From NCBI GenBank assembly GCA_965644295.1, contig CBFFRP010000427.1, positions 83,167-147,166 of the forward strand: 64,000 nt of DNA, read 5' to 3'. The notes under the pieces are model-generated. The model was not told where the DNA came from and searched no databases. It was given only the letters and a program-made list of their open reading frames with translations. Position numbers and translations under genes: made by a program. Origin of the DNA: Paraphysomonas bandaiensis (lineage: Eukaryota > Protista > Chrysophyceae). Shown here piece after piece: positions 21,040-56,923 of the stretch. Each line of letters starts with the position of its first letter. Positions within the stretch are counted from its first letter, which is position 1.

Positions 21040-23014
21040 ATGGGGTCTGGTGTATCGAAAACCAATGCCCTGCCATCAAGAGAGAACAGCTCTCACAGCA
21101 AATCATACTCGAGCAAGAAACAGGGGCCCACAGATAGGAGAGTGAGCGTTTATTTCGGGTCTCAAACGGGAACGGCGGAGGAGTTTGCACGGGTGGTCGT
21201 ATCGGAGGCTCTGAATAGCGGATTCGATGCCAAACTGATTGATCTTGAAGACTATCAACCGGAGAAACTCAAGTCCTGTCATCTGGCTGTGTTCTTGGTA
21301 GCTACCTATGGTGAAGGAGGGCCAACTGACAATGCATCTAGATTTCTGGAATGGTTGGAAAACGAAGATGGCAATATTGGTGGCGATTATTTGTCGCAAC
21401 TTGATTTTTGTGTATTCGGTCTCGGCAATTCTCAATATGAGAATTACAATAGAATGGGACGTTTCGTTAATGAAGGCTTAGAGAGGCTTGGTGGGCGACG
21501 GGTATTCAAATATATGGAAGGTGATGACAATGGAACACTTGAGGAAGATTTTGAGTCTTGGAAGGCAGTTTTTTTTCCTGCAATGGTGGAGAAATATCAG
21601 GGCTCTGGTGACGAGATTGAAGACACACGCACAACTAATGCTGCCCTCAGGTTTCGCTGCATACCATGTGCTCCTGCATCTCCAGTTATCCCCAATACGG
21701 ACTTGTTTAACTCTTCTACCAAACACTTCTTCAACTCCGTTGAGGCGACCGTAACATGCAACCGCGAGATGCGTACACCTGAAGATGGGGGGCACACCAT
21801 TCATATGGAGCTAGATATTAGCGGGACTGACTTAAGATATTACACGGCTGATAACTTAGCGGTAATTCCAGATAACTCCGTTGAGGTTGTGGAGATGTTT
21901 TCCAAGTGTTGTGGAGGATTTGATCTTGACCAGTATATCGATATTAAATCTGTCGTTCCCGATCCCAAGGATGGGGACTCCTCTGTTGCCTCAGCTTTTC
22001 AGCATCCATTTCCGACCCCATGTACTATTCGTGAGATATTCACCCGCTTCCTGGCTATTGACAGTATTCCTCGCAGGAGTACCATCGAAAAATTGGCCGC
22101 TTACTTGACTGACGACAAACAGGTCTCATGGCTCGTGGACATCGTGTCCAAGGAATCAAAAGATACCTTCACTTGTAAGATTGAAGAAGAAGGTCGAACC
22201 TATGTATCTCTTCTCTCGAAAGAGCTATCGTCCTGTTTAATTCCACTGGAGGATTTACTACACATCTTACCCACTATTCAGCCGAGGTACTACACTATCG
22301 CCTCGTCCAGCACGTGCTACCCTTCCAGTGTTCATCTAACCGTCAGTGTTATGGAGCGAATAGCACCATCTGGGACTAAAGTGCAAGGTTTTTGTTCTTC
22401 ATTTCTTCATGGATTGGTTCCAGGGCATGGAAGGTGTCGAATATTTACCAGAGAATCTGTTTTTCGTCTGCCACCCAATATCTTGACTCCAATTATTATG
22501 ATTGGGCCAGGGTCTGGTATCGCTCCCATGCGAGCACTTCTTCAAGAGAGAAAGTTTCGAGCTGACCGAGAAGGTGTGCCAATCGCAGAAGTTACAAATA
22601 TTCTATACTTTGGATGCAAGTCTCGAAATCGTGATTTTCTATACCAGGAGGAGCTAATTGCTGCTGTTGCTGATGGTCGTCTGACGTCGCTCAAACTGGC
22701 CTTTTCTCGAGAACAGAGAGAGAAGATATACGTTCAGACCATTATGACAGAAGAAGAAAATGCATCCGAGTTGGCAAATCTAATTGTTGACAGAGGAGCA
22801 CATGTCTTCCTCTGTGGTGGTACTGCCATGGGACAATGTGTTCAAGAGACCCTCACACATATACTTTCTGAGCGAAAAGGTGCGTATTGTTATATTTTGT
22901 AAGGCAGTGTGATTGATGTAAGTAAATTTAGGAATGACTATTGATGAAGCTTCCGCTTTTCTTAAAACAATGCAGAATAACAAGATATATAAGCGGGAAT
23001 TGTGGTCTATATAG
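21040..23014 (+). CDS. NADPH-cytochrome P450 reductase-like diflavin oxidoreductase; intron 22880-22931
   Basis: Flavodoxin motifs FGSQTGTAE, ATYGEG and FGLGNSQYE; FAD motif QPRYYTIASS; NADPH motifs MIGPGSGIAPMR, LYFGC, LAFSR and KIYVQ. The spliced C-terminus ends YKRELWSI*. Confidence 0.9.
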
Positions 23015-29453: not shown

Positions 29454-32400
29454 TCACTCAGTGCGGAGAGACTTGGGTACGTTTTCCTGCAAGAGGTCAA
29501 CTTCCTCCTTCAAGATTTTTACGTCAGCAAACATATTTTCCAACAAAATATCGTAACTCCTATCGATGTCTGCATAGTCATACGTACGCTGATCGAGATC
29601 GCGGACCGCTTCCACTATAACTGGGATAAGCTCAATATATTTTACACCCAGGTATTGACCATTGTGAGTTTTCGTAACTATGTCGGGGAGTACTTCTTGT
29701 ACATCCTGGGCAATCACACCCAAGTGAGTTTCATTTTTTCCATCACTCATAATCGAATCTGCCGCCCATTTGTAGTATACCCCTCTTATTTTTGAAACCT
29801 TGGCAAGTGAATCCCGAATAGTTGTAATATCGGACTTAAGTCTCCTATCTGAGTCGACCGTAGGGTTTCCTTGGAACCATATATTACCATACACTGTTAG
29901 TCCATTTGTAATATACACTCCGCCGCTCAGAACAGACAGACCTTCTGTGATCTGTACCCCACTATCATCGATAGTCATTCCATCAAGCTGTATATATAAA
30001 CCACTGTTGTACACAGTAAGTCCATTCGAAACTCGCAGACCACCAGCTCTAACAGTCGCCCCACCACCTCGTACATACACTCCTGTATCTTCAACCGTTA
30101 ATCCTCCAGTCACTTCAATGCCTCCACTTTTAACAGATATACCGTTTGTAATCACGGCACCACCCCTCACAGATAATCCACTAGTAAGTCCCATACCACC
30201 AGAAAGTATACTTATACCTCCAGCATTTACGACCAGACCCTCCGAATCAATGGTAAGGCCTCCGGCATCCATAAACATACCACCGTCTGTAATAGTCATG
30301 CCAGACGGCACAGTCATACCACTCAAAGAATTCAGACCGCCGGTATACACTGTTACACCACCGGTAACACGCGCACCACCAACGTGTACAGACACACCTC
30401 CAGTTAACTGCATACCTCCAGTTTTTACACTTACTCCATCAGTTACCTTGAGTCCACTTAGGCTCACAGTAATACCGCCTAACGATTTTATTCCACTGTT
30501 TCCCACAGACAACCCAGATGTAATAGCCACGCCAGCACTCAAAACGGACACTCCATCCGTTACTTTCATTCCTCCGCTGTTGACTGTGGCACCTCCAGTT
30601 ACAACAATGCCGGTGTTGTATACGGTTAAGGCATCAGAAACTCTTAAGCCACCAGCTTTAATAGATACTCCAACGATAGGAATCAATGCCCCACTATTAT
30701 ACACAGTTAAACCGTGCGATACACCGACCCCACCATTGTGGAGAGATAATCCATCAGTTACAACCGCACCACCAATAACAGAGAGTCCGCCGGTTAGACG
30801 CAGGCCTCCAGTAAATATAGTTTCTCCGCCTCCAATTTTCACACCAGCCGCAACTACACTTAATCCAGTAGCACTTACATGAAGTCCACCAGTGTCTATT
30901 GTAGCGCCCGACTGTATAGTCAGATCGAGAGCATGAAAGCCACCATCATATACTGTCATGCCGTCAGTTGTGCGTAGTCCACTATTGGTTACGCTCATAC
31001 CACCACGGAGTGCCACACCACCAATGGCGACAGTTAACCCGCTAGTAACTTTGAAGCCAGATGATGACACAGTCACGCCTCCCTTAACTTTGATTCCGTC
31101 ACCAGGAAATGTAAGACCACCATCCGTAATATCTAGACCTCCAGCAATTACAGTCAGACCGGTGTTCGGCAGCGTCAGGCCACCAGACACTACAAACCCA
31201 CCGTTACTTATAGACAACCCCCCAGTGGCAATGAAACCATCAGATGGCACGGACATCCCTCCCTTTGCTTTCAACCCGCCAGCATTAATTGTTGCACCTT
31301 TCGCTGTTATATACAAACCACCAGAGTTGATTGTGGCTCCACTGGTAACCACAAAACCACCGGTTCGTACAGTTGCACCACCTTCAGTACGGAGCCCGCT
31401 GTTAATAGCAGAGAGACCACCATCGACAACCAAACCGCCGTGGTCAATAGTCAACCCATGCGACTGAACGAATATACCACCTTGAGTAACAGTCAAGCCC
31501 TGTTCCACCGTCCCTGCTTTTCTGGCATAAAAATTACCCGAATCCAGAGTAAGTCCACCAGTAGTCTTCATACCACCGCTCAAAACGGATAACCCCCCTG
31601 TTATGAATGCGGCAGCATTAAAAATTGTGAGTCCACCTGAAACACCTGTTCCGCCTGCTGCTACAGAGACACCATCGGTAACAACATTCAAACCGCCCTG
31701 GGAAATTGTTTGGCCTCCAGCAGACACTTCTATACCAACAGTTGACACTGTCAGTCCAGTACCTACTGTTGCACCACCCGTAATAGCAGTAGCACCGCCC
31801 ATTTGAGCACCACCACCTGTTGTTATGCCACCAAGAGCATTCAATCCACCATTCTGTACACAAAGGCCACCAGTGACACGAGCTCCAGCACTGTGGACAG
31901 AAAAGCCATTAGTAACCCTCATGCCACCTGTGCTTATGGATGCGCCCCCATTGAAGTACACTCCAGCAGTACCCACTGATATACCAGCAGTAACATGCAT
32001 GCCGCTGGCTACACGGCCAAACCCATTGACATATAACCCACTATTATAAACAGTTACACCGCCAGACACTCTAACACCACCAGAAACTACTGAAGCACCA
32101 GCAGCTTCTACGAACACCCCACCAGAAGAAGCAGTAACTCTTCCAGCTACCTTCATTCCATCAGAAACAACAGTCATACCACCATCTGATAACACGAATC
32201 CACCATCAACCGTGCCACCCCCGGTCACAACCATGCCGTTCGCATTCACTGACAAACCGCCAGCAGTGACATATACACCGCCAGATCCGACCGTAGAACC
32301 ACCAGTGACGTATAGCCCATCTCTAACAACTGAAACGCCGCCCGTGACCTTCATACCACCTGAAAAAATTGTGCCTCCAGCTGTTACTTTCATCCCAGCA

Positions 32401-35400
32401 GCAGCAACACTAAGTCCTTCAGCACTCATCATCAAACCTCCTTCGACTATAGTTGCACCACCAGTCACCTTAACTCCACCTGTCCATACCGTCGCCCCAC
32501 CAGTTACTGCCACGCCATTAAGAGCGACCGACCCACCACCAGATCCCACTACTAGCCCGTCACTATCAACTGTGACACCTCCAGTCACCTTTACACCACC
32601 ACTGCTAACTGTTACGCCTCCTGCTACTTTTAGTCCGGTAGCAGCAATCGTTGCCCCATCCGCTGTTACAACTAACCCGTCGTCATTAACAGTTAATCCT
32701 CCAGTGAAGCTTCCACCTCCGGCGTACACACTTAAACCGCCGGATGCTCTGAAGCCAGAGTTATATACTGACACGCCTTGAGACACTTGCAACCCTCCTG
32801 ATGTAATTTTAGTTGCGCCTGCAACAATCATTCCGGAATCAAGTACAGAGATGCCACCTGCAGCTGTCATACCGGAGGCGGAAATACTTAGACCAGCTTC
32901 AGACGTTAACCCAGCACTGTTAACAGTGAGACCGCCAGTCCCAACAACGCCACCAATAGTAGTAAGGCCGCCAGCAGACACATATACACCTCCGGTAGAT
33001 ACTGTTACAGCAGAGGTGACTTTAAAACCAGCGGATCCGATCGACAATCCGCTCCGTACCATCATTCCGCCATCAAATACACTGTGACCACCAGTTATCT
33101 GTAGTCCTCCCACTCGCACCGATAATCCGCCAGTAACTGTAACTCCATTAGACATAACTGAGAGCCCCCCAGTAACTTTCATTCCGAGGGAAGCAACAGT
33201 TACACCTCCAGTCACTGTTGCTCCTTCACTGTTAATAGTCATACCGTCCGTTAGCCGTAAGCCATCATCAAATATTGTTAAACCATCTGTTGTAATTTCT
33301 ACACCTAAGCTGGCCCGAAATAAGGCTGATGAAACAAGTGCTGCTCCAGATACAGTGGCGCCACCAACTATTTTCATGCCTCCAGCAGAAACAGTAGTAC
33401 CACCATCAATAACTAGACCATCGTCCATAATACTGGCACCTCCAGTGACTCGCATACCGTCCATTTGGACCGAGAGCCCTGCCGTGCGTACGAGTAAACC
33501 ACCAGTCAATATCGAGGTCCCTCCGGTGATCACCAGACCACTGTCTTGAATGCTCACTCCACCAGTAGCTTTCATCCCAGCAGCAGCAACACTAAGTCCT
33601 TCAGCACTCACCATCAAACCTCCTTCAACAATACTTGCACCACCAGTCACCTTAACTCCACCTGTCCATACCGTCGCCCCACCAGTTACCGTCATGCCAT
33701 TAAGAGCGACTGACCCACCCCCAGAGCCTACTACCAGTCCACCACCATCTACAGTGAGACTTCCAGTCACCTTTACACCACCACTACTTACAGTTGAACC
33801 ATCGGCTGATACTTTAAGGCCCGCTGAGGCAACAGTAACACCCCCTTTTTGAAGAACCACACCTACATTTCTAACTGTTGCGCCGCCAGTTAATTTCATT
33901 CCACCAGTTACAATAGTCAAACCAGTGTTCGGTAAAATCATCCCCGCATCAATGGTAGCTCCTCCAGTGACAACAACACCTTCAGCCTCCACAGAAACCC
34001 CTCCACTGCTAATATACACACCTCCGCTACTTACAGTGGTGCCCCCAGCTACCTTCAGGCCGTTTGAACTCACAGTTCCACCACCACCAGCTGATACGCC
34101 ACCATTTGATACAACTATGCCGTCACTTCCAACAGTCATACCTCCAGTCGTAACAACCAATCCGGCACTGACTGTGCCCTGGTTACGGATGAACAGTCCA
34201 ACCGTCTCAATCGTAGATCCTCCAGTTGTCGACAGCCCACTAGAAACGGCAGATATACCAGCAGATACCTTTAGCCCTCCAGACTGAACAGAAGTTCCAC
34301 CCGTGACTTTCATACCTGCAGAAAATACAGTGGCCCCTCCTTTGACGAGAAATCCATCGGCTTCTACTGTAACGCCCCCAGCAAGTACATACAAGCCTCC
34401 AGTCGTCACTGTTTCTCCACCTTTAATCGCCACACCACCACTATTTACCGTTACACCATCTGTAACAGTCATCCCAGATGAGTGCACAGTCAATCCACCC
34501 GCAGCTATGGACACCCCATTGTTGAATGTACCACCACCGGACACAGTCGTCCCGCCCGTGACAACAACACCACCCGTAACTTTCAGACCACCTGCCATAA
34601 TACTTGCACCAGCCGTTACTTTAATTCCATCGGCATTTATAGATACGCCACCCTTTGTAACGTAAATTCCAGTATCATCGACAGTAAGCCCACCGGTAGT
34701 GGACACACCGTTGTCGTAGACAGTCAATCCATCGGATACTTGTAGCCCCCCTCCATTGAGGGCAACACCACCAGATGTTAACGTAACACCTCCGTCTACA
34801 GTAGCTCCACCTGTAACATAGAGACCGCTTGCCTTCACTGATAATCCCGTGGCTAGAACATAAATTCCTCCGGTCGAAACTGTGGTGCCACCTGTCACAG
34901 CCAAGCCTGCTTGGGACTCCAATCGATTGCTCAAGGTTGTACCTGTGACAGTGATATCACCAGTAACATGTGCTCCACCCAGAAGTACGGTGACACCACC
35001 GGTGACCTTCATACCGCCCAGCGATGTAGTAGTCCCTCCAGTGGCTTTCATCCCAGCAGCAGCAACACTAAGTCCTTCAGCACTCACCATCAAACCTCCT
35101 TCAACAATACTTGCACCACCTGTCACCTTAACTCCACCTGTCCATACCGTCGCCCCACCAGTTACCGTCATGCCATTAAGAGCGACTGACCCACCCCCAG
35201 AGCCTACTACCAGTCCACCACCATCTACAGTGAGACTTCCAGTCACCTTTACACCACCACTACTTACAGTTGAACCATCGGCTGATACTTTAAGGCCCCC
35301 TGAGGCAACAGTCATTCCGCCCCCTGTAATGTACACTCCTCCAGTACTGACTGTTACCCCACCGTCAACTTTCATTCCGTCATCCGAAATGCTCATTCCA

Positions 35401-38400
35401 TCGTCTGCAACCTCGACCCCACCATCAACGCTTACACCACCAGTTGCGTCTATACCATTGGCAGCCACCTCTAAGCCATTAGTTGCAACTCGAATACCAC
35501 CTGTAAACACTGTGACACCACCAGATACTTTCAAGCCTTCATTGCGAAGTGATACTCCTCCAGTGACCTTCAATCCATTACTAAGGATAGTGAACCCGCC
35601 AGTGACACCGGCCCCATTGGTATAAATATTAAGTACTCCAGCATCTAACCATAGCCCAGTGTCCATAATAGTAAAACCCCCATTAGTAATATACTGACCA
35701 CCCGTCGACACCGTTGCACCGCCAGTAACTTTCAGACCACTATTTAAAATCGATACACCGTCTTCAAAACTGGCACCTGAGGAGAGTACTTCCAATTTAT
35801 TCTTTATTTTCAATCCTCCTGAATTGACAGTACCACCACCAGAAATAGCGAAGCCAGCAGCAGCAACAGATAGCCCACCAACGTTTACTTTGGTCCCACC
35901 ACCAACAACTGTTCCTCCACCAATAGCTCTAAATCCATCACTACTGATGGTCAAGCCACCATCTGATAACACGAATCCACCATCAACCGTGCCACCCCCG
36001 GTCACAACCATGCCGTTCGCATTCACTGACAAACCGCCAGCAGTGACATATACACCGCCAGATCCGACCGTGGATGCACCAGTGACGTATAGTCCATCTC
36101 TAACAACTGAAACGCCGCCCGTGACCTTCAACCCATCCGCAGCGATACTCTGGCCAACATTATTGACATGAAAACCACCATGCTTAATGGTTAAGCCATT
36201 GGCATTTATCCACACACCACCATCCACTATAGTTTTGCCGCCGATAATCTGACTTCCCGTTGTCCACACTGTCTGACCACCAGTAATGGTCAAACCGTTA
36301 CCAGCAATAGAGACACCACCATTTGATACCACATTACCACCAGCATTAATACTTACACCGCCTGCAGCCTGCAAACCCCCAGAGAATACAGTGGATCCGC
36401 CAGTAACAGTGACACCATCAGCATCAACTGATAAACCATTCAACTGAACCAGTAAACCCCCGGAACTAACGGTCGTTCCATCAGCTATCTTCATTCCATC
36501 AGAAACAACAGTCATACCACCATCTGATAACACGAATCCACCATCAACCGTGCCACCCCCGGTCACAACCATGCCGTTCGCATTCACTGACAAACCGCCA
36601 GCAGTGACATATACACCGCCAGATCCGACCGTAGAACCACCAGTGACGTATAGCCCATCTCTAACAACTGAAACGCCGCCCATGACCTTCATACCACCTG
36701 AAAAAATTGTGCCTCCAGCTGTTACTTTCATCCCAGCAGCAGCAACACTAAGTCCTTCAGCACTCACCATCAAACCTCCTTCAACAATAGTTGCACCACC
36801 AGTCACCTTAACTCCACCTGTCCATACCGTCGCCCCACCAGTTACTGTAAGACCGTTGCGCGCTATTGCCCCACCACCAGAGCCTACTATCAGTCCGCCA
36901 CTATCAACTGTGACACCTCCAGTCACTTTCATGCCGCCGTGAACAACTGTCGCCCCACCACTAGATGTCAAGCCTCCGACTTCAACAGTAACTCCAGCTT
37001 TGTCAACGACGATACCACCAGCATTGACTGTCAGGCCGCCTCCAGTGACATACACACCACCATTTGTCACACTGACACCACCCGTTGTGACTACACCATC
37101 ACCAACGGTACTGCCACCTACTACTCTGAGTCCAGTCCCCGATAGTGTGATTCCATCAGCACTAATAACTACCCCTCCACTGACAACAGTGAGGCCTTCA
37201 CGCACTTTGAGTCCAAAACTCGAGACAGTGCCACCACCAGTCAATGTAAAGCCGCGAGACGAAACACTGATACCATTAGTCACCTTCAACCCACCTGCTA
37301 TACTCTGTCCTCCGTTAGAAATGGCTAAACCAGTGCCCGCGATAGTTCCACCATCGACAATGTACATTCCACCTTTCGCAATAGTTAGCCCACCAGATAC
37401 CTTCAAGCCCATATCAGTAATGCTAGACCCTCCCTTAACTTTAAAGCCATCCTTATACACAGTGCCACCTCCAGTTACAGTGAGCCCATGGGCAAGTACA
37501 GATATTCCACCGGTCGTTACAACCATACCTTCTTGTACAGTCAACCCAGAGCTAGCAACGTAAAGCCCCCCTGTTGATACTGTGCTGCCGCCATTGACAA
37601 CCAACCCTGCAGTATTCACAGTTATACCTCCAGTGGAGGTCAGTCCCCCAGTAAAAATAGTGCCCCCACTTGTGATCCTCATTCCTGTACCTTCAACAGA
37701 CACACCGCCATCAACGACTTTAATACCCTCGGTTGACAACGTTACACCATCTATAACAGTGACGCCAGCATCGTAAACTGTTAGCCCAGCTGAAATCTGC
37801 ATACCTCTCATTTTCACTGTGCCAGAGGAAACAACCACACCTTCATCACTTACTGTCAATCCGCTCTTAATCCAAGTTCCTCCTGTATCGACAGTTGTGC
37901 CATCAGTAACTCGCAATCCACTCGACACAACACTTTTTCCACCAATGACCTTAGAACCACCACCTGTTATCGTTAGTCCCCCAGCACTCACCATCAAACC
38001 TCCTTCGACTATAGTTGCACCACCAGTCACCTTAACTCCACCTGTCCATACCGTCGCCCCACCAGTTACTGCCACGCCATTAAGAGCGACCGACCCACCA
38101 CCAGAGCCTACTATCAGTCCGCCACTATCAACTGTGACACTTCCAGTAACCTTCACGGAGCCACTGTTAATTGTTGCACCTCCAGCTACATTAAATCCAC
38201 CTCCGGAAACAGATAACCCAGTTTTCAAAACGCTAAAACCATCATTTCCGACTGTTGCACCGCCAGTTAATTTCAGTCCACCAGTCACGATTGTCAGGCC
38301 AGTGTTCGGCAAAACCACACCCGCATCAATAGTAGATCCCCCTGTAACTCTAAAGCCAACCGTTGTAACAAATACACCACCGCTCTTAATATTCAATCCT

Positions 38401-41400
38401 TCGTCGCCAAGCGAAACTCCTCCAGTGATGTACATCCCACCCGTCTGAAGAGAGACACCATCAAGAACTGTCATACCATCAACAAAAACTGTAGAACCAC
38501 CACTGATATGCAAACCGCTAGCAAGAAGTTGAGCTGTCCCTGTGCGAACTACAATACCCCCATTTTGTACCGTTGTTCCACCCGTGACTTTCATACCTGC
38601 AGAATATACAGTGGCCCCTCCTTTGACGAGAAATCCATCGGCTTCTACTGTAACGCCCCCAGCAAGTACATACAAGCCTCCAGTCGTCACTGTTTCTCCA
38701 CCTTTAATCGCCACACCACCACTATTTACCGTTACACCATCTGTAACAGTCATCCCAGATGAGTGCACAGTCAATCCACCCGCAGCTATGGACACCCCAT
38801 TGTTGAATGTACCACCACCGGACACAGTCGTCCCGCCCGTGACAACAACACCACCCGTAACTTTCAGACCACCTGCCATAATACTTGCACCAGCCGTTAC
38901 TTTAATTCCATCGGCATTTATAGATACGCCACCCTTTGTAACGTAAATTCCAGTATCATCGACAGTAAGCCCACCGGTTATTTTAATACCAGAATCATAA
39001 ATAGTCAATCCATTAGATACCTTGAGGCCTCCGCTTTCAATGGTAACACCATCGTCTTCTACAACCAATCCATCGTTCTCAATGGTGAGTCCATGCTCAG
39101 AGAGAACAAACCCAACATTGCTTACAGTATATCCACCTACAACATGCAACCCACCAGATAGAATTGAAACACCGCCACTTACTTTCATCCCGAGGGATGC
39201 TACAGTGGAGCCACCACTTGAGTATATACCACCGGAATTAACAGTAATACCGCCAGTGACTTTCATACCACCAGTATTTATCGTGGTGCCGTCGCTGACT
39301 TGGATACCTTGAGCCAAGACAGTCAAACCATCCATCTGAGCAATCAGGCCTGTATTTACCACTGTTACACCGCCAGTTACCTTCATTCCTCCAGCGGTTA
39401 CAGTCAAGCCGGTATTAGTGAGGACCACACCAGAATTTAGAGTCGTGCCGCCAGTCACATACAATCCACCTGCAGTTATCGATGCACCCCCTGCAGACAC
39501 ACGCACACCAGTGTCGACTGCAGTTACACCACCACTTACAGCCATTCCTGTGTCATAGATAGAGCCGCCACCGGTAGTACGGAGCCCACTACTTTGAATC
39601 GACATACCGCTCGCAGCTACTAACACCCCCCCAGTGGTGACAGTTATTGAACCTTTAATTTTCATACCATCATTTTCTATTGATAGTCCGTGCGAGAGAG
39701 CAAATATGCCTGCAGAAGAGATTGTCGCTCCAGATGTAACTTTCACACCTCCAGCAGCCACAGAAAGTCCTTTCTCTGTGATATACATGCCTTCGTTTTT
39801 CAGTGTAAGTCCTCCAGTAATATGAACTCCACCTGTATTAACACTCACTCCTCCTGTTATCCGCATACCACCGATGTTGACACTCATACCACCCGACACT
39901 TTAATACCCATATCAGACATTGTCGCACCATCCAATATGAATACACCATCATCATATACCGTCATGCCATCTGACACACGAAGTCCACCAGTGGCTATGG
40001 ATATTGCATTATATGCTACCAAACCATCGTTAAGAGTCACCCCGCCTGTTACTTTCATTCCTCCATCAAGGACAGTCGTACCATCAGTTACAGACACTCC
40101 CGCGCTAGCAACATTAAAACCATTGGCTGAAATGTATATACCCCCTTCGAGAACAGTCACACCACCCCTAACTTTCGAACCCTCAGCATTCACAGATATT
40201 CCACCCGTAACTGCAAAGCCATCTATAGCGACACTGACGCCTTTGGAAGTAACGTGGAGTCCACCTCCTTTCAAAACTGTTAACCCCCCTGTAACTTTCA
40301 TGCCTCCTGCAGCTACGGATATTCCTGCGGTTACTTTCAGCCCATCAGTATTGATCGAAAGCCCATTACTAACAGAAGCACCGTCAAGGGCATTCAAAGA
40401 GCCAGTTATAATATACAGTCCATCATCCCGAACGGTGACTCCACCTGTAGTATCCATACCAGAGTCCTGAATAAGCATGCCACCCAGCAGAACTTGAAGG
40501 CCGTCGTTAGCAATTGTAAGGCCTTCAGTTCTCACATAAATTCCCTCCGTGTCAACACTAATACCATCAGTAACTTTCAGACCACCAGATTCGATGGACA
40601 ATCCAACACTCGAAACTATTCCAGTGTTGACGGCGGTAATACCTCCAGTAACTTTCATACCGCCAAAATACGACGACAGTCCTTGTGTGACAACAACAAC
40701 TCCCCCAGATGTAATTGTCGCGCCACCTTGAACTTTGAAACCAGCGTTATTTACCGTGCCCCCTCCAGTGACCACAAATCCACCACCAACTGAGATTCCA
40801 TTGTTGATTTTTATTCCAGAAGTCGTAACTGTGAGGCCACCGCTATTTATATTCATACCTTCGGACTCAATAGTCGTCCCTCCTGTAACTATTATGCCTA
40901 CATTCCGTACTGACAGCCCACCCGAAATTTGAATGCCAGTTGCTGCTGCCGCAGCACCGTTAGTAGCTATCACTCTTCCAGAGTTTACTGTCAAGCCATT
41001 GGAAGTAACATACAAACCTCCAGTTGCAACAGTGGTACCTCCAGTTATCTTTAGTCCACCAGAGTGTACAGTTGTTCCACCTGTTACTTTCAAACCACCA
41101 CTCATAATAGACGCACCGGGGGTCACTGTCGCCCCTCCACTGGATATACTAAGGCCAGTGTCAGTCACTAGAATTCCACCGGTAGTAACAGTGATACCAT
41201 GCTGATCAACTAGCATTCCTCCAGTCTGTAATCGCATACGACCATTCACTGTCATACCACCACTGTTGATACTAATTCCATCAGTAGTGGTGAGACCATC
41301 ACTTAAGACACTAATACCGTCAGCTATCTTAACTCCTCCTTCTGCAATAGTACCACCTCCAGTAACAGCGACACCTCGGCTACCAATACTTAAACCGCCG

Positions 41401-44400
41401 GCGATGATAATACCGTTGACTAGAATGCTCATACCACCGTCTTGAACATAGAGACCACCAGAGTTCACTGTGACTCCATTGGTCACACCCATGCCACTGA
41501 ACAGAGTGAATTCATCATTAAAAACTGCGGCATCACTCACAGTGAGCCCGCCCGTGAGTATCATTCCATCACTCAAGATTGACATCCCTCCAGCCTGCGC
41601 ATAGATACCACCAGTGTGAACAGTTGAACCTCCAGTCACAACAAGTCCCCCCGATTGCACAGATAAGCTGCTTGTGATCTTCAGTCCACCAGAGAGGACA
41701 GTCACACCAGTAGATACTTTTAAACCATCAGCTTGTACGGATACCCCTCCTGTGGTAACGACTATTCCTCCATCATTTACTGTTAAACCTCCAGTAATCT
41801 TCACACCAGAGGAAACAACAGAAATACCATCCTGAGTCACAACAAGACCATGGTTTGATACTGTGAATCCGTTCATGGATACAATAAGTCCACCATTATC
41901 AATACTAAGACCACCACTATCGATTTCAAGACCTTCATTTCCTAAACTGACACCACCGGTTGCATAGAATCCACCTGAGAGTTGTGAAACTCCACCAGTA
42001 ACTTTTACTCCTCCTGTAAGAGCGGAAACACCACTATTCACTTTCAGCCCATCCGAATCAAGTGATAATCCACCCGAAAGAACGAATACTCCATCTGTTA
42101 AAACAGTGGCACCTCCAGTGACTTTGAGACCACCGGAGGTAACAGATACCCCCCCGCTCACCGTGGTACCTCCAGACATTATCGACATACTTCCTGTTAC
42201 AGAAATCCCCCCTGTGTGAATTGTCAGTCCACCTGAGTTTACGCTTAGACCATTGGTTACTGTCATGCCTCCAGAATTGACGGAGCTTCCGCCAGTAACG
42301 GTCGTTCCATGATTTACGATACTGAATCCACCAGACGCAATATACATACCGTCTGTATTCACAGTGTGCCCACCAGTTAAAGTCAGACCTGAGCTTTGAA
42401 CAGATGTACCTCCAGTAACCCTAAGTCCATCGTTATTAACAGTTGTTCCACCAGTTAGTTTCACGCCATCAAAATTCACTGTAAGACCATTCTTTGAAAT
42501 CTTGACACCACCGGAGTTAATAGTGTTCCCCCCAGTGACAGCCATACCACCAGCTACGACTGATACACTGCCAGTAACCTTAACACCACCCGTGTAAATA
42601 GACTGCCCACCGGTTAAGCGTAGGCCGTCTCGTTCGATAGATAGGCCACCGCCAGCAATGCTCAAGCCGTAATCATGCAGAGATGAGCCACCTGTAACTC
42701 TCATACCTCCAGAGTTAACAGAAAATGTGTTCGTTACTGCCAGACCGCCAGAACTAACCGAACCACCTCCTGTGACGCTGATTCCATGTAGTGCAACCGT
42801 CAGTCCATGTGCAACGACATAAATACCACCGTCATTCACAGTCAGTCCATTGGCTATTTTTAATCCTCCCGAACCGACAGTTGTTCCTCCTGAAACTTCG
42901 AATCCACCTGACATCACAGATAGTCCACCAGTGAGTGTAAGACCATCATCAGCAATAGATATGCCTTCGGTGCTGATGTACAAGCCACCGGTGTTTACCG
43001 TCGCTCCATCCGAAACCATCAAACCAGCAGAGTTGACCGATACACCACCAGTTGTCTTCATTCCGCCTGTGTGCACAGTGAGTCCATCAGTCACTTTCAC
43101 ACCAGCTTCGAGAACAGAAACACCACCAACGTTAACCTTCATCCCTCCCAATGAGACTGTGGTGCCACCTGCCGCGACACGTATACCATCTGCTGGTACA
43201 TGGAGTCCGTCGGTTTGAATTGTCACTCCAGTAGAGACATAAACTCCCTCTGAGAGTACACTCAGTCCAGCAGTGATCCGCATCCCCTGGCTGTTAATTG
43301 ACATCCCATCAGACAAAACTAGGCCACCAGATAATATGCTTGCTCCTTCAGCTACAGTAATGCCTTGGCTCAATATCGACATTCCTGCAGATACTTTGAG
43401 CCCCCCACCAATTGTTAGGCCTCCTTGGGCGATGTTCAGCCCACCGCGATACATCTCCATGTTTCCGCCTCCGTCAAGCTCAAAAATTGTATCTACATTA
43501 TCGCTGATCCGAAAAAAATTAATATCGGAGGTGGATGGGTTGGTGGAGGACAAATGAAGCACATTTGCTGAATAGGCAGCAGATGTGGTCTGCACATATA
43601 ATACGTCGTATACATCCGAATCCACGACTTCGATAATATTATACGAGTCGCAATTTGTATTCTCAAAGTCTTGAAAACAGCTACATACGCCACTATCAAA
43701 ATTGCATAGTCCTCTATTACTGCAGTATGCGTATTCTGTGATCATTACCATATATAAGTAATAAAAGCAATATCAACAGGGAATATATCTTACCCGGAAT
43801 GGAGCCCACAGATACATCTTGCAAGATGCATGTGGGATTGGTACCAGATGTCACCCCGCTCACATCACACTGAAATGAGGACAATGTCGGATTGCCGTTG
43901 TGGGTGTATATATTATTTTCCCATGGCTGAAGGGGGAACGACCGCAGCTGAACTGTGTACAAAGCACCGGAAAATCCGTTGATCACTCCACGGGTGCAAT
44001 TGACATCCTTGACGTTTTTCAAAGATTCAAATGCAGTCTCACATTCGAAACTTGAGAAACTATTCGCGTCGGCATTAAAGCTGAAATACTCCCCATTAAA
44101 TGTCAGCTTAATTTCTCCGTCAAGAGAGCCAGCCGAGGCCGAAGTTTCAAACGTTATTGTGCGGTAGTCAGTAGATACTGTAAATGGGTCATCACCTTTC
44201 GGACACATCCCTGCTCACATATAAGCGTGCACACAGTAAATAAGCATGTAGTTCTTACGCATGGAACAGTCCTGTCCAGTATACCCTGAGATTAAAATTT
44301 AGACGAGGGGTTACTATATACAGGCTCGGTCGTACCCATATCACATATACACCCAGTAACCTGCTCTCCCTCCCAACCATCGTAGTCACCGTCATTCCCA

Positions 44401-44949
44401 ACGGTGTAGAAGTCATATATACGTTCAATTGTTAGACAAGTTCCATGTTCACCGCAATTCCGTCCACATGATACTGTTCCATACTTTTAATTCTACATAT
44501 ACTATATACTTCATTACACAAGTACTTACTGCGCTCACAAGCTGCGCCTTCGAACCCTTCCATACATTTACAGCGACCCTTAGCAAATTTTAGACGGCAC
44601 ATAAAATTATTAAGTTATGCATACCGTATGCCGGTCACATATCCCTTGATTCGAACATTCTGTAGAGGCATGTCCCTCATTCTCTGCGCTTGCTTTGTCT
44701 GCCCACGCATAACCGGAAGGGCAAAATTCTAGCAAAACAAAACGATAAATAAAAAACACGCACTATTTGCTGCTTACGAAGTGAACAGTCCGGAACTACA
44801 TTGTATGAGTCTTCACAGGTGCACGTGTTGTCAAAATTACAGCTCCCGTGACCACGACAGTGATTCGGACACGCTGCTTGAGTTTCAATTAATCTAACAG
44901 CGAGTATGAAGAGCACTGGCAACACAATGCCAACAGACATCTTATCCAT
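29454..44949 (-). CDS. Giant secreted fibre protein (~5,062 aa): signal peptide, mastigoneme/SIG1-like EGF head, ~4,500-aa Gly-rich beta-repeat shaft, C-terminal peptidase S74 chaperone
   Basis: Exons 44949-44778, 44728-44625, 44578-44530, 44473-44336, 44285-44259, 44210-43794 and 43735-29454. All six introns are GT-AG, 46-58 nt, and the 15189 nt total stays in frame. Head CPNHCRGHGSC..CPSGYAWAD..ECSNQGICDRHTGRCKC..DCSMRMCPKGDDP; tail SDRRLKSDI..LGVIAQDVQEVLPDIV..GVKYIELIPVIVEAVRDL. Confidence 0.9.
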
Positions 44950-47108: not shown

Positions 47109-49476
47109 TTAAGGTGAGAGCTCACTGAACACTACTGGGGAGTTCAGTTTCCAATCATTACCAGTACAGTTGGCTGGTTTAAGCTTGATATTCTCAATGT
47201 GCAAATCTGCAAATCACACATAAAAGCAAGAACAATTATACAAAAACATACGCACCAATCAAGACCTTTTCGATATCCCGCACATCGTAAGGCTTTTTCA
47301 GAACCACATTACCTCCACATGACGTAAATCTTTCGTTTGTATCGGGAAAGTTTTCATGAGATAACAATACTGAGGTTCCTTTAAATCCGAGCCGTCGGAG
47401 TCGCGATATGATCATGTGAGGCTTCCTGCCGGGCAGCTCGCAATGAATAAATATAACTCCAATATGTTCAGCAAGATTAATAGACTCATCCACCTCATCA
47501 ATAGTTTTCTTTTCATTGTATGTTACATCCACGCGTTGCACGCTAGCACACTGACGCAAAACATCATTCACGAGGTCGGTACTTTCGCGACACGCAGAAG
47601 CAATGACTACTCGACTCAGCTCTACATCCTTTATGGATATACTTTTCCCTGGGGGCTCCCAAAGTTGACCTTCTCTCACATCTTCACGGGAAGATAGCTC
47701 CATATACCGCTCTGAGCACATTCCATCACTAGAGGTCGCAGGTGTGACACTTCCATCGAGAACATCTAACTCTATGAAAAACACACACCCCTTTCCGTAT
47801 TCGGAGACGACACCCACGTTACCTCCATGTAAGCTGATAATAGTTTTCGATACTACAAAACCCCATTCATTACTATTATAAAACAAACAAAAAAAGGAAG
47901 AATTACGTACCCCAGATTCCCACACCGGATCCACCTGATGCCAGCATTGAAACGCTGTTCTGCATACTCTCCTTAAACATTTCTCTTTGACGCTCCGGAG
48001 GTATTCCTGGACCGGTGTCATGAATTTCAATTCGTAGTACATCTGACCGCGTTTGCCCGAAGTCGTTTCGCGCTTCCTCAGCCACACTATGCTTTAAGAA
48101 TGTAAAAACTTCCACTTTTCCTCCATCAGGAGTGAATTTAAGAGCGTTAGAGACGAGGTTGCGGATCACTTGAATAATTCTATTTTCATCAACATCAATG
48201 AAAATGCCAGTGCAACTTGGGTCAGTGTAACTCTGACCCTGATAATTCAGAGCTATATTCGCTCGCCTTGCCTGTGCAGAAAAAAAATCACAAAAAGAAG
48301 TATATCATAACCGTCTACCATAAACTGCATGGGGCCCATTGCTTTGACGACCAAGTCCACCGCTTTGACGGATTGGCGATATATGGTCAACGCATTCTCT
48401 TCTATTTCGTCCAGGATTAGCATATCATCCAACACACGATCCACAAGTGCACATGATTTCTTAATATCCTCTATGACGCCAACTAAATCTAGCGCCTCTG
48501 GGATTTTGCTCCCCATTGCGGTGGCGACATCGAGTCCCATGTACACAGTATCAAGAGTACTACGAACTTCACGGGAGAGGTATTTCACGAATCTCTTCTT
48601 TAAAGAAAATAAATTCTGCAAGATCGTTAGATACGCCAGCGGATAAAGTGTTCCTACCTCTGCATTAGCTTTTTCTTTTCGTGCAATGTGCGCAGGAATC
48701 ACAGCTCCAAGAACACTGATTATAGCGTCAATGAAGGTATTGTTACCAATGAAGAAGTAAAGCTTCCCCATGTTTATAGCACTATTTGGGTCAGGGTTTT
48801 CAAATAACAATTTCATGGAAATTCTTGCTATAAGGCTTATTAAAAGCAGGAGTGAATAGTAATGCGCATACTGAGCTAGACCGCTAACAGATCGGTTGTC
48901 ACGTTTAGTCATCACATCTTCCCACACTTTATACAGCACGACTGATAAGAAGACAGCAACCCACACAAGGTAAAGAATAGTAGACACTGTATATATTGCG
49001 GGTAATTCAGGATAATAAGGAAACCACCCGCGGAGTAGTAAATCACCACAGGCTAAAATTATTCCAAATGAGTACACGCGCTTCGCAAATGTAGAATAAT
49101 ACTCTACATCGTGGTACATATGACTCATCAGAGCCGCCCGAATAAGTATGTTTTTAGCAATGTGACTGCAGAGAAACAACGCCTGTGATGAAGATTGAAA
49201 ATACATCACAGCACTGGGCACGAGGAGGCTTATAATATGAGTAAATCTCGGCAGAGTAATCGTATGAGGCAGATTTAAATCAAGCAGAGCCTCCAGCATG
49301 ATAGGTACAGTAACAGACATAGACACCAATTCTGCGACCATCGCATACTCGAACGCACTATCGGATACCTCTTGATGAAATCTATAGCCGAGAAAATATG
49401 GAAGATAAGCAAAAAAAGCTGCTGTGACTGCCAGAGATAAAAACAAATACAGTGAGAGACTGTCTCCTCGACGCAT
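47109..49476 (-). CDS. Multi-pass membrane hybrid histidine kinase-like protein (HisKA-HATPase-receiver) with degenerate phospho-sites; introns 48616-48657, 48272-48318, 47853-47910, 47207-47255
   Basis: Several hydrophobic helices, then KKRFVKYLSREVRSTLD (H-box position), QVIRNLVSNALKFTP (N-box), DTGPGI (G1), GSGVGIW|VSKTIISLHGG (G2) and a receiver ending VLKKPY. The start codon is inferred. Confidence 0.85.
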
Positions 49477-56400: not shown

Positions 56401-56923
56401 GAGGAAGAAACATCTCGTTCATACACTCCTTCCTCTGCGGAGAGACAGATAACTGCTCCCTCTGCTTCATCTACTACGTCAGATAAGCCAACTGATACTG
56501 CATCGACTTCAGGAGAGACAAAACCCACAGTAGATTCCCTTTTGCAGATGCTTTCTTCCTTAGAAGGTTGTCTTGTACATATTTACATTTTTGTAGAAGT
56601 GACTGTTTCTACAGGAAAGTCACTTAGTGGACCTGACAAGCGGTCGTTGACTGCAGTCAATCCTGCCTTGGCATGCTTGCAGAAACAAATGTCTGCAGGT
56701 CAAGTTAGCACAGAGACGATGGAAAAACTCGAGCAACTTGTATCGGCCCTTGCCAATAAGCAGAGCTCGTCAGCGAATGCTATTCATACGGTGGGTGGTC
56801 TAACCTACGTGATGTATTTTGTGATTTTATTGGTATCAGGAACTCGTAAACGCTTACTGGGCTCAACACAAGGACTGGCTTAAAGGTTTGAAATATCTAA
56901 TTCAGCTATTAGCGAAGCATTGA
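53454..56923 (+). CDS. SEC31: COPII outer coat protein Sec31; introns 53547-53598, 53709-53756, 56567-56614, 56791-56839
   Basis: N-terminal WD40 propeller (LALGTK-like MVALGTK, SRFASIAWS, IVWDLR, IKLWDLRS, GHTEGILSVSWC), RAPKWLRK..GASFGFGGKL, ACE1 helical region (WKETLAIL), Pro/Gln-rich linker and C-terminal helical domain (HKDWLKGLKYLI). Confidence 0.93.

What the first reader, a model, noticed from the sequence alone, without database searches (positions are those of the whole stretch)
29454..44949. Giant secreted eukaryotic fibre: mastigoneme-type EGF head fused to a ~4,500-aa phage-tail-fibre-like shaft and a self-cleaving S74 chaperone
Seen: the 4765-aa ORF is only the last exon. Six short GT-AG introns link it in frame to a signal peptide and Cys-rich modules (CPxGxAWxD, ECSNxGxCDRxTGxCxC, DCSxRxCPxGDDP). 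From ~43460 to ~29880 the protein is a near-uninterrupted ~7-residue G-hydrophobic-x-hydrophobic-x-x repeat (GMKVTG/GVTVNSG/GLYVT..) with almost no Cys or Pro and no C-terminal membrane anchor. Known: these Cys motifs typify stramenopile tubular mastigoneme/SIG1 proteins, and S74 domains chaperone trimeric beta-helices in phage tailspikes/fibres (K1F endosialidase, T5 pb1) and occur in animal MYRF. Inference: a homotrimeric beta-helical filament displayed via a mastigoneme-like head. At ~0.48 nm per ~7-aa strand layer it would be roughly 0.3 micron long. It is a candidate for flagellar-hair terminal/lateral filaments or a surface adhesion, prey-capture or defence fibre. I do not know of this architecture being described.
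Basis: partly seen in the sequence, partly recalled or inferred. Interest (0 to 1): 0.93.

Follow-up and report, generated by a model that had tools for sequence, protein, structure and literature searches.

The report
Giant mastigoneme-headed trimeric fibre gene
A golden-alga (chrysophyte) gene encodes a roughly 5,060-residue secreted protein with a flagellar-hair head, an unusually long glycine-rich fibre and a phage-type self-cleaving trimerisation domain; it is a good but untested candidate for the fine filaments on stramenopile flagellar hairs, whose protein make-up I believe is unknown.

Summary
On the minus strand, 44949/44940..29454 holds one seven-exon gene. Its six GT..AG introns are 46-58 nt and all phases fit. 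It encodes a signal peptide, a Cys-rich EGF head, a conserved neck, a shaft of about 4,515 aa built from about 669 G-cornered units (mean 6.6 aa), and a C-terminal Peptidase_S74 domain with the Ser/Lys pair intact.

The head matches only the six chains of the solved tubular mastigoneme (PDB 9UFE). Relatives carry head, shaft and S74 in one intron-free ORF, so the head and the giant exon belong to one protein. The architecture is not unique. Unnamed "hypothetical" proteins of 800-2,900 aa with the same layout occur in Ochromonas danica, Epipyxis, Phytophthora species and many metagenomes. This copy, from a chrysophyte, is the longest seen, enlarged by internal duplications.

The shaft shows no homology to phage fibres; only the last 250-300 aa do. 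AlphaFold monomer models leave the shaft extended with no intrachain sheets, which fits an intertwined trimer of about 0.3 µm.

Best reading: a secreted, self-processing homotrimeric fibre anchored by a mastigoneme-type head, probably a terminal or lateral filament of the flagellar hair. Its location is inferred, not shown. I found no paper describing the family.

The parts
44875..44949 (-). Start codon (ATG at 44949 or, in frame, 44940) and predicted signal peptide, with hydrophobic core VGIVLPVLFILA
   Evidence: KD(12) 2.97. N-termini of homologues align from residue 1. No dedicated signal-peptide predictor was available.
44778..44940 (-). Exon 1: signal peptide plus first EGF-like module
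   Evidence: Weak EGF_2/EGF_Teneurin hits. Colinear with homologues.
44625..44728 (-). Exon 2: CPxGxAWxD motif and the start of the second EGF-like module (ECSNxGxCDR)
   Evidence: Direct PDB hit to 9ufe_DA residues 57-89, E=5.2e-5, and to OCM3, E=1.9e-4.
44530..44578 (-). Exon 3: end of the second EGF-like module
44336..44473 (-). Exon 4: third Cys-rich module
   Evidence: No PDB hit on its own.
44259..44285 (-). Exon 5: 27-nt micro-exon (YTGQDCSM)
   Evidence: Intron 5 contains an in-frame TGA, so splicing is required (sequence).
43794..44210 (-). Exon 6: CPxGDDP motif plus a 138-aa insert domain lying between EGF modules 3 and 4
   Evidence: 36-49% identical to homologues. 61 metagenome loci encode a relative. 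No Pfam or PDB hit on its own.
43647..43735 (-). Start of exon 7: fourth EGF-like module
   Evidence: Hits the terminal EGF of 9ufe_DA (residues 178-206), E=2.1e-5. Its Cys residues are invariant in alignment A2.
43449..43646 (-). Neck: conserved ~65-aa linker with a small beta-meander before the repeats
   Evidence: Conserved in 72 relatives. AF2 predicts strands at model residues 72-94 with pLDDT 84-92.
29904..43448 (-). Shaft: about 4,515 aa in about 669 G-cornered units of 5-8 aa (G-G-hydrophobic-x-hydrophobic-x-x)
   Evidence: No PHROG hit; the only Pfam match is a sub-threshold Fil_haemagg hit. No N-x-S/T sequon.
32119..38856 (-). Zone of internal segmental duplications: 300-nt copies 71-97% identical and protein blocks of 70-167 aa at 78-90% identity
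   Evidence: dN/dS 0.30-0.62.
29850..29852 (-). Codon of the predicted S74 nucleophile Ser (exon-7 aa 4628), with Lys five residues downstream. This is the predicted self-cleavage site, releasing a 132-aa C-terminal piece.
   Evidence: Ser and Lys are invariant in 85 sequences.
29676..29852 (-). Peptidase_S74 (intramolecular chaperone) Pfam match
   Evidence: 66.4 bits, cut-off 22. PDB MyRF ICA 7dc3, E=1.8e-6. Foldseek 7dc3, 3gud, 3gw6, 4uw8.
29460..29639 (-). Predicted 60-residue C-terminal helix of the chaperone domain
   Evidence: AF2 model residues 340-399. pLDDT is 81-95 over these residues.
29454..29456 (-). Stop codon

Best explanation
This is a single nuclear gene of a chrysophyte alga. 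It encodes a secreted fibre protein of about 5,060 aa.

Proposed mechanism:
1. The signal peptide takes the chain into the ER.
2. The C-terminal S74 domains of three chains associate and register the chains, as in phage fibres and MYRF.
3. The glycine-cornered shaft then folds from the C-terminus as an intertwined three-chain beta-structure, one 6.6-aa unit per face and layer. About 670 units at about 0.48 nm give about 0.3 micron.
4. The chaperone cuts itself off at Ser4628 of the exon-7 product, removing a 132-aa piece of about 15 kDa.
5. The mature fibre, about 3 x 470 kDa, carries three N-terminal heads homologous to the building blocks of the tubular mastigoneme.
6. These heads dock the fibre to the hair, where it forms a terminal or lateral filament.

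What is shown: the gene structure, the domain architecture, the homology of head and chaperone, the conserved catalytic pair, the repeat anatomy, the spread of the family and the eukaryotic context.

What is inferred: trimer formation, cleavage, the intertwined fold, the length, and above all the location on the flagellar hair.
For: Gene model:
- Phases and splice sites fit.
- The exons are colinear with contiguous homologues.
- L005 (1334 aa) and L008 (1374 aa) hold head, shaft and S74 in one ORF, with EGF and S74 above Pfam cut-offs.

Head:
- The heads of P0105, L005 and O. danica P0321 hit all six 9UFE chains, E from 1e-26 to 8e-47.
- The window's own exon 2 and exon-7 EGF hit the same chains in the expected order.

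Chaperone:
- Pfam 66 bits.
- Ser and Lys invariant.
- The AF2 model of the domain has pLDDT 82-96 and matches MyRF ICA, GA-1, K1F and T5 chaperones.
- 35 PHROG families matched, nearly all tail-fibre or other tail proteins, best E=1e-24.

Shaft:
- The G period is conserved at 5.9-7.2 aa in 27 complete relatives.
- Both AF2 monomer models give the shaft pLDDT of about 65-89 but no DSSP secondary structure. That means an extended chain without intrachain sheets.
- There is no three-unit periodicity.
- N-glycosylation sequons are absent: 0 against 12.1 +/- 2.9 in column-preserving shuffles. This fits passage through the ER and tight packing.

Biology:
- The organism is a chrysophyte. Its Vps45 is 97% identical to an MMETSP transcript, 67% to Ochromonas sp. 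CCMP1393 and 65% to Mallomonas.
- The family occurs in O. danica, Epipyxis and Phytophthora, which all bear tubular hairs (established knowledge, not tested here).
- Ochromonas hairs carry lateral filaments of two sizes and one to three terminal filaments. The laterals are added in the Golgi (Bouck 1971, PMC2108286).
- The O. danica S74 protein is a paralogue of the six chains in the solved shaft but is none of them, as expected for a part outside the resolved tube.
Against: - No expression, proteomic or localisation data exist for this gene or any relative.
- No multimer prediction could be run, so the trimer and the intertwined fold rest on what S74 domains do elsewhere and on the behaviour of AF2 monomer models.
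- The shaft gives a Fil_haemagg match, sub-threshold in the window but above cut-off in L005 and L008. Three 6.6-aa units equal one ~20-aa coil of an FHA-type single-chain helix.
- Foldseek matches of the shaft to intertwined phage fibres are not significant.
- EGF-type heads of this family also occur in proteins not shown to be on hairs.
- A Phytophthora parasitica zoospore membrane proteome lists no protein named S74. I could not map its 18 EGF proteins to this family.
- The paper behind 9UFE is not in the library and may already say something about these proteins.
Confidence: 0.55

Rival explanations
1. The molecule is the same secreted S74-processed trimeric fibre, but it is not part of the flagellar hair. 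It would sit on the cell surface or in extracellular material and serve adhesion, prey handling, or cyst, lorica or stalk construction. In this reading the mastigoneme-type head is only a general extracellular assembly module.
For: Only the head is homologous to mastigoneme chains, and the O. danica relative is not among the chains of the solved hair. Cell-encoded S74 fibres used for prey recognition exist in Bdellovibrio (PMC10769870, listed). Saprolegnia, Achlya and Aphanomyces have head+neck proteins without a detected S74, so the head is used in several contexts. Shaft lengths vary from 345 to about 4,500 aa, which is more variation than hair filament classes obviously need.
Against: All significant PDB matches of the head are mastigoneme chains, with the same module order. 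All organisms named so far that carry the family bear tubular hairs. Hairs have filament parts whose proteins I believe are still unknown (for the parts themselves).
Confidence: 0.25
2. A structural rival: each chain folds on its own into an FHA-like three-sided beta-solenoid of about 20 aa per coil. The chains would be single or three side by side, giving a thicker rod of about 0.11 micron instead of an intertwined 0.3 micron fibre.
For: Fil_haemagg matches: 18 bits in the window, and 38 and 30 bits in L005 and L008, above the 21.5 cut-off. Three 6.6-aa units make 19.8 aa, the FHA coil length.
Against: AF2, which in my experience readily predicts solenoids, gave no intrachain strands over about 460 aa of shaft in two models, despite pLDDT of about 65-89. 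Residue autocorrelation peaks at 13 aa, not 20, and T/S shows no signal at 20. Unit-length autocorrelation is -0.43 at lag 1 and -0.07 at lag 3, so the three sides are not distinct. No TPS or other two-partner secretion domain was found.
Confidence: 0.15
3. The head exons and the giant ORF are separate genes, or the locus is a pseudogene or an assembly artefact of a repeat.
For: No transcript data. Internal 300-nt copies up to 97% identical could confuse an assembler. No exact match of the ORF exists in public gene calls.
Against: All six junctions keep the frame. The order of segments is identical in at least 20 contiguous proteins and in single-ORF loci. The 14.3-kb ORF is uninterrupted, and its duplicates show dN/dS 0.30-0.62.
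Confidence: 0.03
4. A fibre gene of a virus (giant virus or phage-derived element) lodged in the algal genome.
For: S74 domains are mostly viral, and the last 250-300 aa hit phage tail-fibre families.
Against: The gene has spliceosomal introns, a eukaryotic signal peptide and a stramenopile-specific head. Its neighbours are Vps45, NatA auxiliary subunit, a P450-reductase-like gene and a WD40/WW/Sec16-type gene resembling Sec31. No relative of the shaft was found in IMG/VR. The family is shared by chrysophytes and oomycetes.
Confidence: 0.02

Closest known systems
Stramenopile tubular-mastigoneme proteins (Ochromonas OCM proteins in PDB 9UFE; Phytophthora PnMas1-3; diatom SIG1 type)
   Same: Signal peptide, no membrane anchor, and the same ordered set of Cys-rich EGF-like modules, with a variable insert before the last EGF. 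Sequence similarity of family heads to all six 9UFE chains runs from E=1e-26 to 8e-47. The window's exon 2 and exon-7 EGF hit them directly.
   Different: Known hair proteins end right after the last EGF (209-748 aa chains). This protein continues for about 4,700 aa with a neck, a glycine-rich shaft and an S74 chaperone. It is a paralogue, not one of the solved chains.
Phage tail fibres and tailspikes with a C-terminal intramolecular chaperone (K1F endosialidase 3GW6, T5 pb1 4UW8, GA-1 3GUD, T4-like distal fibre 6F45)
   Same: C-terminal S74 domain with the Ser/Lys pair, preceded by a long fibre. The released piece is 132 aa, against 133 in T5 pb1 (abstract of PMC4690869, listed). Fold and sequence matches appear.
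   Different: The gene is eukaryotic, spliced and secreted through the ER. The shaft has no detectable sequence relation to phage fibres. The N-terminus is an EGF head rather than a virion-attachment domain. The fibre is several times longer than the phage fibres I know of.
MYRF (myelin regulatory factor) ICA domain, PDB 7DC3
   Same: It is the only characterised eukaryotic S74 domain that I know of, and it is the best PDB match here (E=1.8e-6 by sequence, 6e-6 by fold). It is preceded by a beta-helical stalk and acts as a trimer.
   Different: MYRF is a membrane-bound transcription factor with an Ndt80-type DNA-binding domain and a transmembrane helix. None of that is present here.
Triple-stranded beta-helix fibres (T4 gp5 needle, streptococcal phage HylP)
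   Same: Short units of 6-8 residues with Gly at the corners and alternating inward hydrophobics. This comparison is from my own knowledge of those structures.
   Different: No significant sequence or fold match (best Foldseek E>0.2). At about 670 units it would be by far the longest such helix that I know of.
Bdellovibrio chimeric fibre proteins with S74 (PMC10769870)
   Same: Fibres with an S74 chaperone that are encoded by a cell rather than a virus and are displayed outward.
   Different: They are bacterial, much shorter, and have different tips and anchoring. There is no EGF head.
Chlamydomonas mastigoneme (Mst1/Mstax)
   Same: Also a flagellar hair made of secreted glycoprotein.
   Different: Unrelated proteins: hydroxyproline-rich and Ig-like (abstracts of PMC10602792 and PMC11015965, listed). 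No homology was detected here.

Membership tests
Peptidase_S74 / intramolecular chaperone auto-processing domain | Pfam PF13884 match above the gathering score | tested here: met
   66.4 bits against a cut-off of 22, E=2.8e-18.
Peptidase_S74 / intramolecular chaperone auto-processing domain | Catalytic Ser with Lys five residues downstream (S-D-x-R-x-K) | tested here: met
   SDRRLK at exon-7 aa 4628-4633. Ser and Lys are invariant in 85 aligned relatives.
Peptidase_S74 / intramolecular chaperone auto-processing domain | Fold similar to solved chaperone domains, at the C-terminus of a fibre | tested here: met
   AF2 pLDDT 82-96. Foldseek 7dc3 E=6e-6, with 3gud, 3gw6 and 4uw8 next.
Peptidase_S74 / intramolecular chaperone auto-processing domain | Trimerisation and self-cleavage actually occur | not testable with these tools
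   This needs expression and mass spectrometry, or a Ser-to-Ala comparison.
Stramenopile tubular-mastigoneme protein family (OCM/PnMas/SIG1 type) | Ordered Cys-rich EGF-like modules with sequence similarity to proven hair proteins | tested here: met
   Exon 2 to 9ufe_DA 57-89, E=5.2e-5. Exon-7 EGF to 9ufe_DA 178-206, E=2.1e-5. Contiguous homologue heads hit all six 9UFE chains, E from 1e-26 to 8e-47. The window head was tested exon by exon only.
Stramenopile tubular-mastigoneme protein family (OCM/PnMas/SIG1 type) | Signal peptide and no transmembrane anchor | tested here: met
   Hydropathy only: N-terminal core KD(12) 2.97, and no C-terminal hydrophobic segment. No SignalP was available.
Stramenopile tubular-mastigoneme protein family (OCM/PnMas/SIG1 type) | Physical presence in mastigonemes | not testable with these tools
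   The O. danica relative is not one of the chains in 9UFE. No proteomic link was found.
Stramenopile tubular-mastigoneme protein family (OCM/PnMas/SIG1 type) | Restricted to stramenopiles that bear tubular hairs | tested here: inconclusive
   The organisms named are chrysophytes and oomycetes. Absence from hairless lineages could not be established, because word-index searches are length-limited and capped.
Phage tail fibre / tailspike | Shaft homologous to phage fibre families | tested here: not met
   No PHROG hit for three 1000-aa shaft windows; only the last 300 aa hit. No shaft relative was found in IMG/VR.
Phage tail fibre / tailspike | Viral genomic context | tested here: not met
   Spliceosomal introns and ordinary eukaryotic neighbours.
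Triple-stranded beta-helix fibre | Short Gly-cornered units with alternating hydrophobics and three equivalent faces | tested here: met
   Units of 5-8 aa with G at position 1, and hydrophobic residues commonest at alternating positions (3 and 5 in the 8-aa units). No three-unit periodicity.
Triple-stranded beta-helix fibre | Three chains intertwined in common sheets | tested here: inconclusive
   Only monomer AF2 was available. The shaft comes out extended with no intrachain sheets at pLDDT of about 65-89. Foldseek matches to gp34 and HylP are not significant.
FHA/TpsA-type single-chain beta-helix (Fil_haemagg) | Pfam PF05594 above cut-off | tested here: not met
   Window: 18.0 bits against a cut-off of 21.5. 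The relatives L005 and L008 do pass, at 38.4 and 29.8 bits.
FHA/TpsA-type single-chain beta-helix (Fil_haemagg) | Coil periodicity of about 19-20 aa with three non-equivalent sides | tested here: not met
   Autocorrelation is strongest at 13 aa, and T/S has no signal at 20. Unit-length lag-3 autocorrelation is -0.07.
MYRF-type membrane-bound transcription factor | Ndt80-type DNA-binding domain and a transmembrane helix flanking the S74 domain | tested here: not met
   No such Pfam hits and no hydrophobic segment.

The most novel reading that the evidence does not exclude
This conserved family (mastigoneme-type head + glycine-cornered shaft + S74 chaperone) makes the terminal and/or lateral filaments of stramenopile tripartite flagellar hairs. 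An ancestor of chrysophytes and oomycetes would have fused a virus-type fibre-folding module to a hair subunit. Filament length would then be set genetically by the number of 6.6-aa units, and this chrysophyte copy would specify a filament of about 0.3 micron.
Probability: 0.4. Interest if true: 0.82.

Novelty: new variant of a known kind. Interest (0 to 1): 0.66.

Why it matters
Tubular flagellar hairs define the stramenopiles and reverse the thrust of the flagellum. The tube has now been solved (PDB 9UFE). The fine terminal and lateral filaments have been seen since the 1960s-70s (PMC2107633, PMC2108286), yet to my knowledge no protein has been assigned to them.

A conserved family that joins a hair-subunit head to a long self-assembling fibre gives a concrete, testable candidate. 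It would also be the second functional class of eukaryotic S74 proteins after MYRF. If the fold is as inferred, it would be the longest triple beta-helix I know of, in which repeat number can be read directly as fibre length. Even if the fibre proves not to be flagellar, it is an undescribed class of eukaryotic extracellular fibre present in crop-pathogenic oomycetes and in abundant planktonic algae.

Tried and rejected
- Exact look-ups of the giant ORF and of two neighbouring proteins found nothing on record.
- Literature: no paper in the library links mastigonemes with S74, endosialidase chaperones or tail fibres, and none pairs 'Peptidase S74' with oomycetes, diatoms or flagella. The paper behind PDB 9UFE is not in the library.
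- The Phytophthora parasitica zoospore membrane proteome has no entry named S74. Its EGF proteins could not be mapped to this family without sequences. The related preprint has no supplements held.
- Exon 6 and exon 4 alone gave no PDB hit, and exon 6 gave no Pfam hit.
- A shaft segment found no relative in viral contigs.
- Foldseek of the neck+shaft model gave nothing significant.
- A 13-aa two-strand beta-roll (YadA or antifreeze type) was considered because of the 13-aa periodicity. I rejected it as less likely because AF2 predicted no intrachain sheets.
- I rejected a viral origin of the locus and a split-gene reading; see the rival explanations.
- The joined (spliced) protein was not built, searched or folded. 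All head tests were done exon by exon by reference, or on naturally contiguous homologues.
- The prokaryotic genome collection was not scanned.


Full report
**Observation**

The minus strand holds an uninterrupted 4765-codon ORF at 29454..43751. There are seven exons: 44940..44778, 44728..44625, 44578..44530, 44473..44336, 44285..44259, 44210..43794 and 43735..29454. The six introns are 46-58 nt, all GT..AG, and AT-rich. Every junction keeps the reading frame, and the CDS is 15,180 nt. Intron 5 is a multiple of three but contains an in-frame TGA, so it has to be spliced out. The quoted Cys motifs are present.

Each exon was handled by reference, and whole-architecture tests were made on naturally contiguous homologues.

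**Is it one gene?**

Three independent lines say yes.
- At least 20 contiguous proteins from other organisms align with exons 1, 2, 3, 4, 6 and the start of exon 7, in that order and without overlap.
- tblastn of five such heads against the whole window finds only this locus, and the breaks between aligned segments mostly fall at or near my exon boundaries.
- A metagenome scan with exon 6 returned 61 loci. Fourteen of them hold the exon 1, exon 2, exon 6 and S74 segments in order on one strand, thirteen of those with the EGF4/neck segment and six with exon 4 as well.

In the closest of these loci, L005 and L008, the entire architecture is a single intron-free ORF of 1334 and 1374 aa. Both have EGF and Peptidase_S74 above the Pfam cut-offs.

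**Context and organism**

The neighbours are ordinary eukaryotic genes: a Sec1-family gene (Vps45), the NatA auxiliary subunit, a P450-reductase-like flavoprotein, a WD40/WW/Sec16-type protein (Sec31-like by its domains), and a Copia-type RT fragment. The Vps45 protein is 97% identical to an MMETSP transcript, 67% to Ochromonas sp. CCMP1393, 65% to Mallomonas annulata and 61% to Epipyxis. The window is therefore from a chrysophyte. It is not human and not viral.

**The head**

Pfam gives only weak EGF hits for the short exons. The PDB search is informative. Exon 2 matches residues 57-89 of 9ufe_DA, 'Tubular mastigoneme protein' (E=5.2e-5), and OCM3. The EGF at the start of exon 7 matches the last EGF of the same chains (E=2.1e-5). 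The heads of contiguous relatives hit all six chains of 9UFE (three 'Tubular mastigoneme protein' chains, OCM3, OCM5 and OCM6), at E from 1e-26 to 1e-30 for P0105, 2e-26 to 5e-36 for L005, and 2e-33 to 8e-47 for the O. danica protein. Nothing else in the PDB comes close.

The head is thus a full mastigoneme-subunit module: EGF1-3, a variable insert (exon 6), then EGF4. The O. danica member is a paralogue of the solved chains, about half identical over the first 190 residues, and is none of them.

**The tail**

The last 132 aa form a Peptidase_S74 domain (66 bits against a cut-off of 22). Its Ser (exon-7 aa 4628; window 29852-29850) and the Lys five residues later are invariant in an 85-sequence alignment. 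The AF2 model of this part has pLDDT 82-96, ends in a 60-residue helix, and matches the MyRF ICA domain and the GA-1, K1F and T5 chaperones. By sequence it hits MyRF 7dc3 and a T4-like distal fibre. It also matches 35 PHROG families, nearly all tail-fibre or other tail proteins. There is no membrane anchor.

**The shaft**

About 4,515 aa lie between the neck and the chaperone. They are 24.5% Gly and rich in V, T and S, with one Cys and nine Pro. The region parses into 669 units that begin with G or GG. Of these, 96% are 5-8 aa long, with hydrophobic residues commonest at alternating positions. Almost all 'irregular' units are two normal units with a corner Gly replaced, so there is no hinge-like insert.

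The mean period is 6.6 aa, and the strongest autocorrelation is at 13 aa. T and S show only the 13-aa series. Neighbouring unit lengths compensate each other (lag-1 autocorrelation -0.43), and there is no three-unit signal.

Three 1000-aa windows of shaft give no PHROG hit and only a sub-threshold Fil_haemagg hit. No relative was found in viral contigs. Calling the shaft phage-like is therefore justified only for its last stretch next to the chaperone.

Two AF2 monomer models, built with family alignments, cover about 460 aa of shaft. They give pLDDT of about 65-89 yet no DSSP secondary structure. In other words, the chain is confidently extended and does not pair with itself. In my experience that is how single chains of intertwined trimeric fibres behave in monomer prediction, and it is not how solenoids behave.

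Taken with the S74 domain, which in every studied case I know of folds a homotrimer, the best reading is a triple-stranded beta-helix. With one unit per face and layer, about 670 units at 0.47-0.48 nm give about 0.32 micron. The main structural rival is an FHA-like single-chain helix: three units make about 20 aa per coil, and Fil_haemagg passes its cut-off in L005 and L008. That fold would give about 0.11 micron. It is disfavoured by the missing 20-aa periodicity and by AF2, but it is not excluded.

**Two further features**

First, the shaft contains no N-x-S/T sequon. Shuffles that keep the composition of every repeat column give 12.1 +/- 2.9 (minimum 4 in 500), and full shuffles give 33. 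This fits a protein that folds in the ER and cannot tolerate N-glycans on its packed faces.

Second, the middle of the shaft contains dispersed duplications: 300-nt copies up to 94-97% identical and protein blocks of 70-167 aa. Their dN/dS is 0.30-0.62. The great length is therefore a recent, lineage-specific expansion under purifying selection.

**The family**

A phmmer search with the last 600 aa found 94 representatives below 1e-30 and 1,984 below 1e-10. About twenty of the long hits have about 29 Cys in their first 400 aa plus the S74 motif.

Members with a named source come from:
- Ochromonas/Chlorochromonas danica (914-974 aa);
- Epipyxis;
- Phytophthora fragariae, P. rubi and P. pseudosyringae (1,415-2,378 aa; annotated 'hypothetical', 'EGF-like domain-containing' or 'Peptidase S74 domain-containing').

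Other members come from unnamed MMETSP transcripts and Tara scaffolds with eukaryotic neighbour genes. The G period is 5.9-7.2 aa in 27 complete members, whose shafts span 345-1,971 aa. In metagenome loci the distance from the insert domain to S74 is 0.8-3.5 kb, against 13.9 kb here. The window's protein is the longest member I saw, with the caveat that fragmented assemblies hide long repeats.

**Function**

Ochromonas hairs have a tubular shaft, lateral filaments of two sizes and one to three terminal filaments. The laterals are added in the Golgi (Bouck 1971). Recent Phytophthora papers name only three mastigoneme proteins, PnMas1-3, two on the tubular shaft and one tied to hair development. 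I know of no protein assigned to the filaments.

This family fits that gap: a hair-subunit head joined to a thin, rigid, length-programmable fibre. It is conserved in chrysophytes and oomycetes, and it is absent from the solved tube. I rate 'secreted, S74-processed trimeric fibre with a mastigoneme-type head' at about 0.85, and 'it is a filament of the hair' at about 0.5. The alternative is the same fibre used elsewhere on the cell surface.

**Novelty**

The domains are known, and the architecture is already visible in public proteomes, so the gene is not categorically new. I found no description of the family in the searchable literature. The paper behind 9UFE could not be read. I file it as a new variant of a known kind: a mastigoneme-family protein extended into a chaperone-assembled fibre.

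Noticed in passing
window 29904-43448 (-): The shaft has no N-x-S/T sequon at all, although N, S and T are common. Shuffles that keep each repeat column give 12.1 +/- 2.9 (minimum 4 of 500), and full shuffles give 33. This suggests selection against N-glycosylation.
   Followed up: partly
window 32119-38856 (-): Dispersed rather than tandem internal duplications: 300-nt copies 71-97% identical and protein blocks up to 167 aa at 90% identity. dN/dS is 0.30-0.62. They explain the exceptional length.
   Followed up: partly
window 30001-44000: GC content rises to 0.46-0.50, and plus-strand GC skew falls to between -0.19 and -0.39 across the giant exon. This follows from GGN/GTN-rich codons on the minus strand.
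   Followed up: no
window shaft units: Neighbouring repeat units compensate in length (lag-1 autocorrelation -0.43), so pairs sum to about 13 aa. The same holds in Epipyxis P0020 (-0.39) but not in Phytophthora P0174 (+0.26). The structural reason is unexplained.
   Followed up: partly
L002:742-22102 (Tara scaffold_53): P0002 (3,786 aa) has shaft-like G/V repeats but no EGF or S74 hit. It lies next to an 11,112-aa gene call whose start is also a G/V/S-rich repeat, in GC-rich DNA. This may be another giant fibre family using a related repeat.
   Followed up: partly
window 1644-3389 (+); 9775-12512 (-); 21040-22902 (+); 53788-56883 (+): Housekeeping neighbours: Vps45 (Sec1 family); NatA auxiliary subunit, split over two ORFs and so probably holding an intron; a flavodoxin/FAD/NAD reductase; and a WD40 + WW + Sec16-type protein. 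Many genes here are single long ORFs, so introns are few and short.
   Followed up: partly
window 59702-60781 (-): An ORF with a weak Copia-type reverse transcriptase (RVT_2) match just below the Pfam cut-off, probably a retroelement remnant.
   Followed up: no
window 47236-48087 (-): The ORF just upstream of the fibre gene has a weak response-regulator receiver match, below the Pfam cut-off.
   Followed up: no
P0172, P0173, P0168 (Saprolegnia, Achlya, Aphanomyces): Saprolegnialean oomycetes have proteins with the same head and neck but no detected S74. The Aphanomyces protein carries a dockerin-type hit instead. Either the gene models are incomplete or the C-terminal module differs.
   Followed up: no
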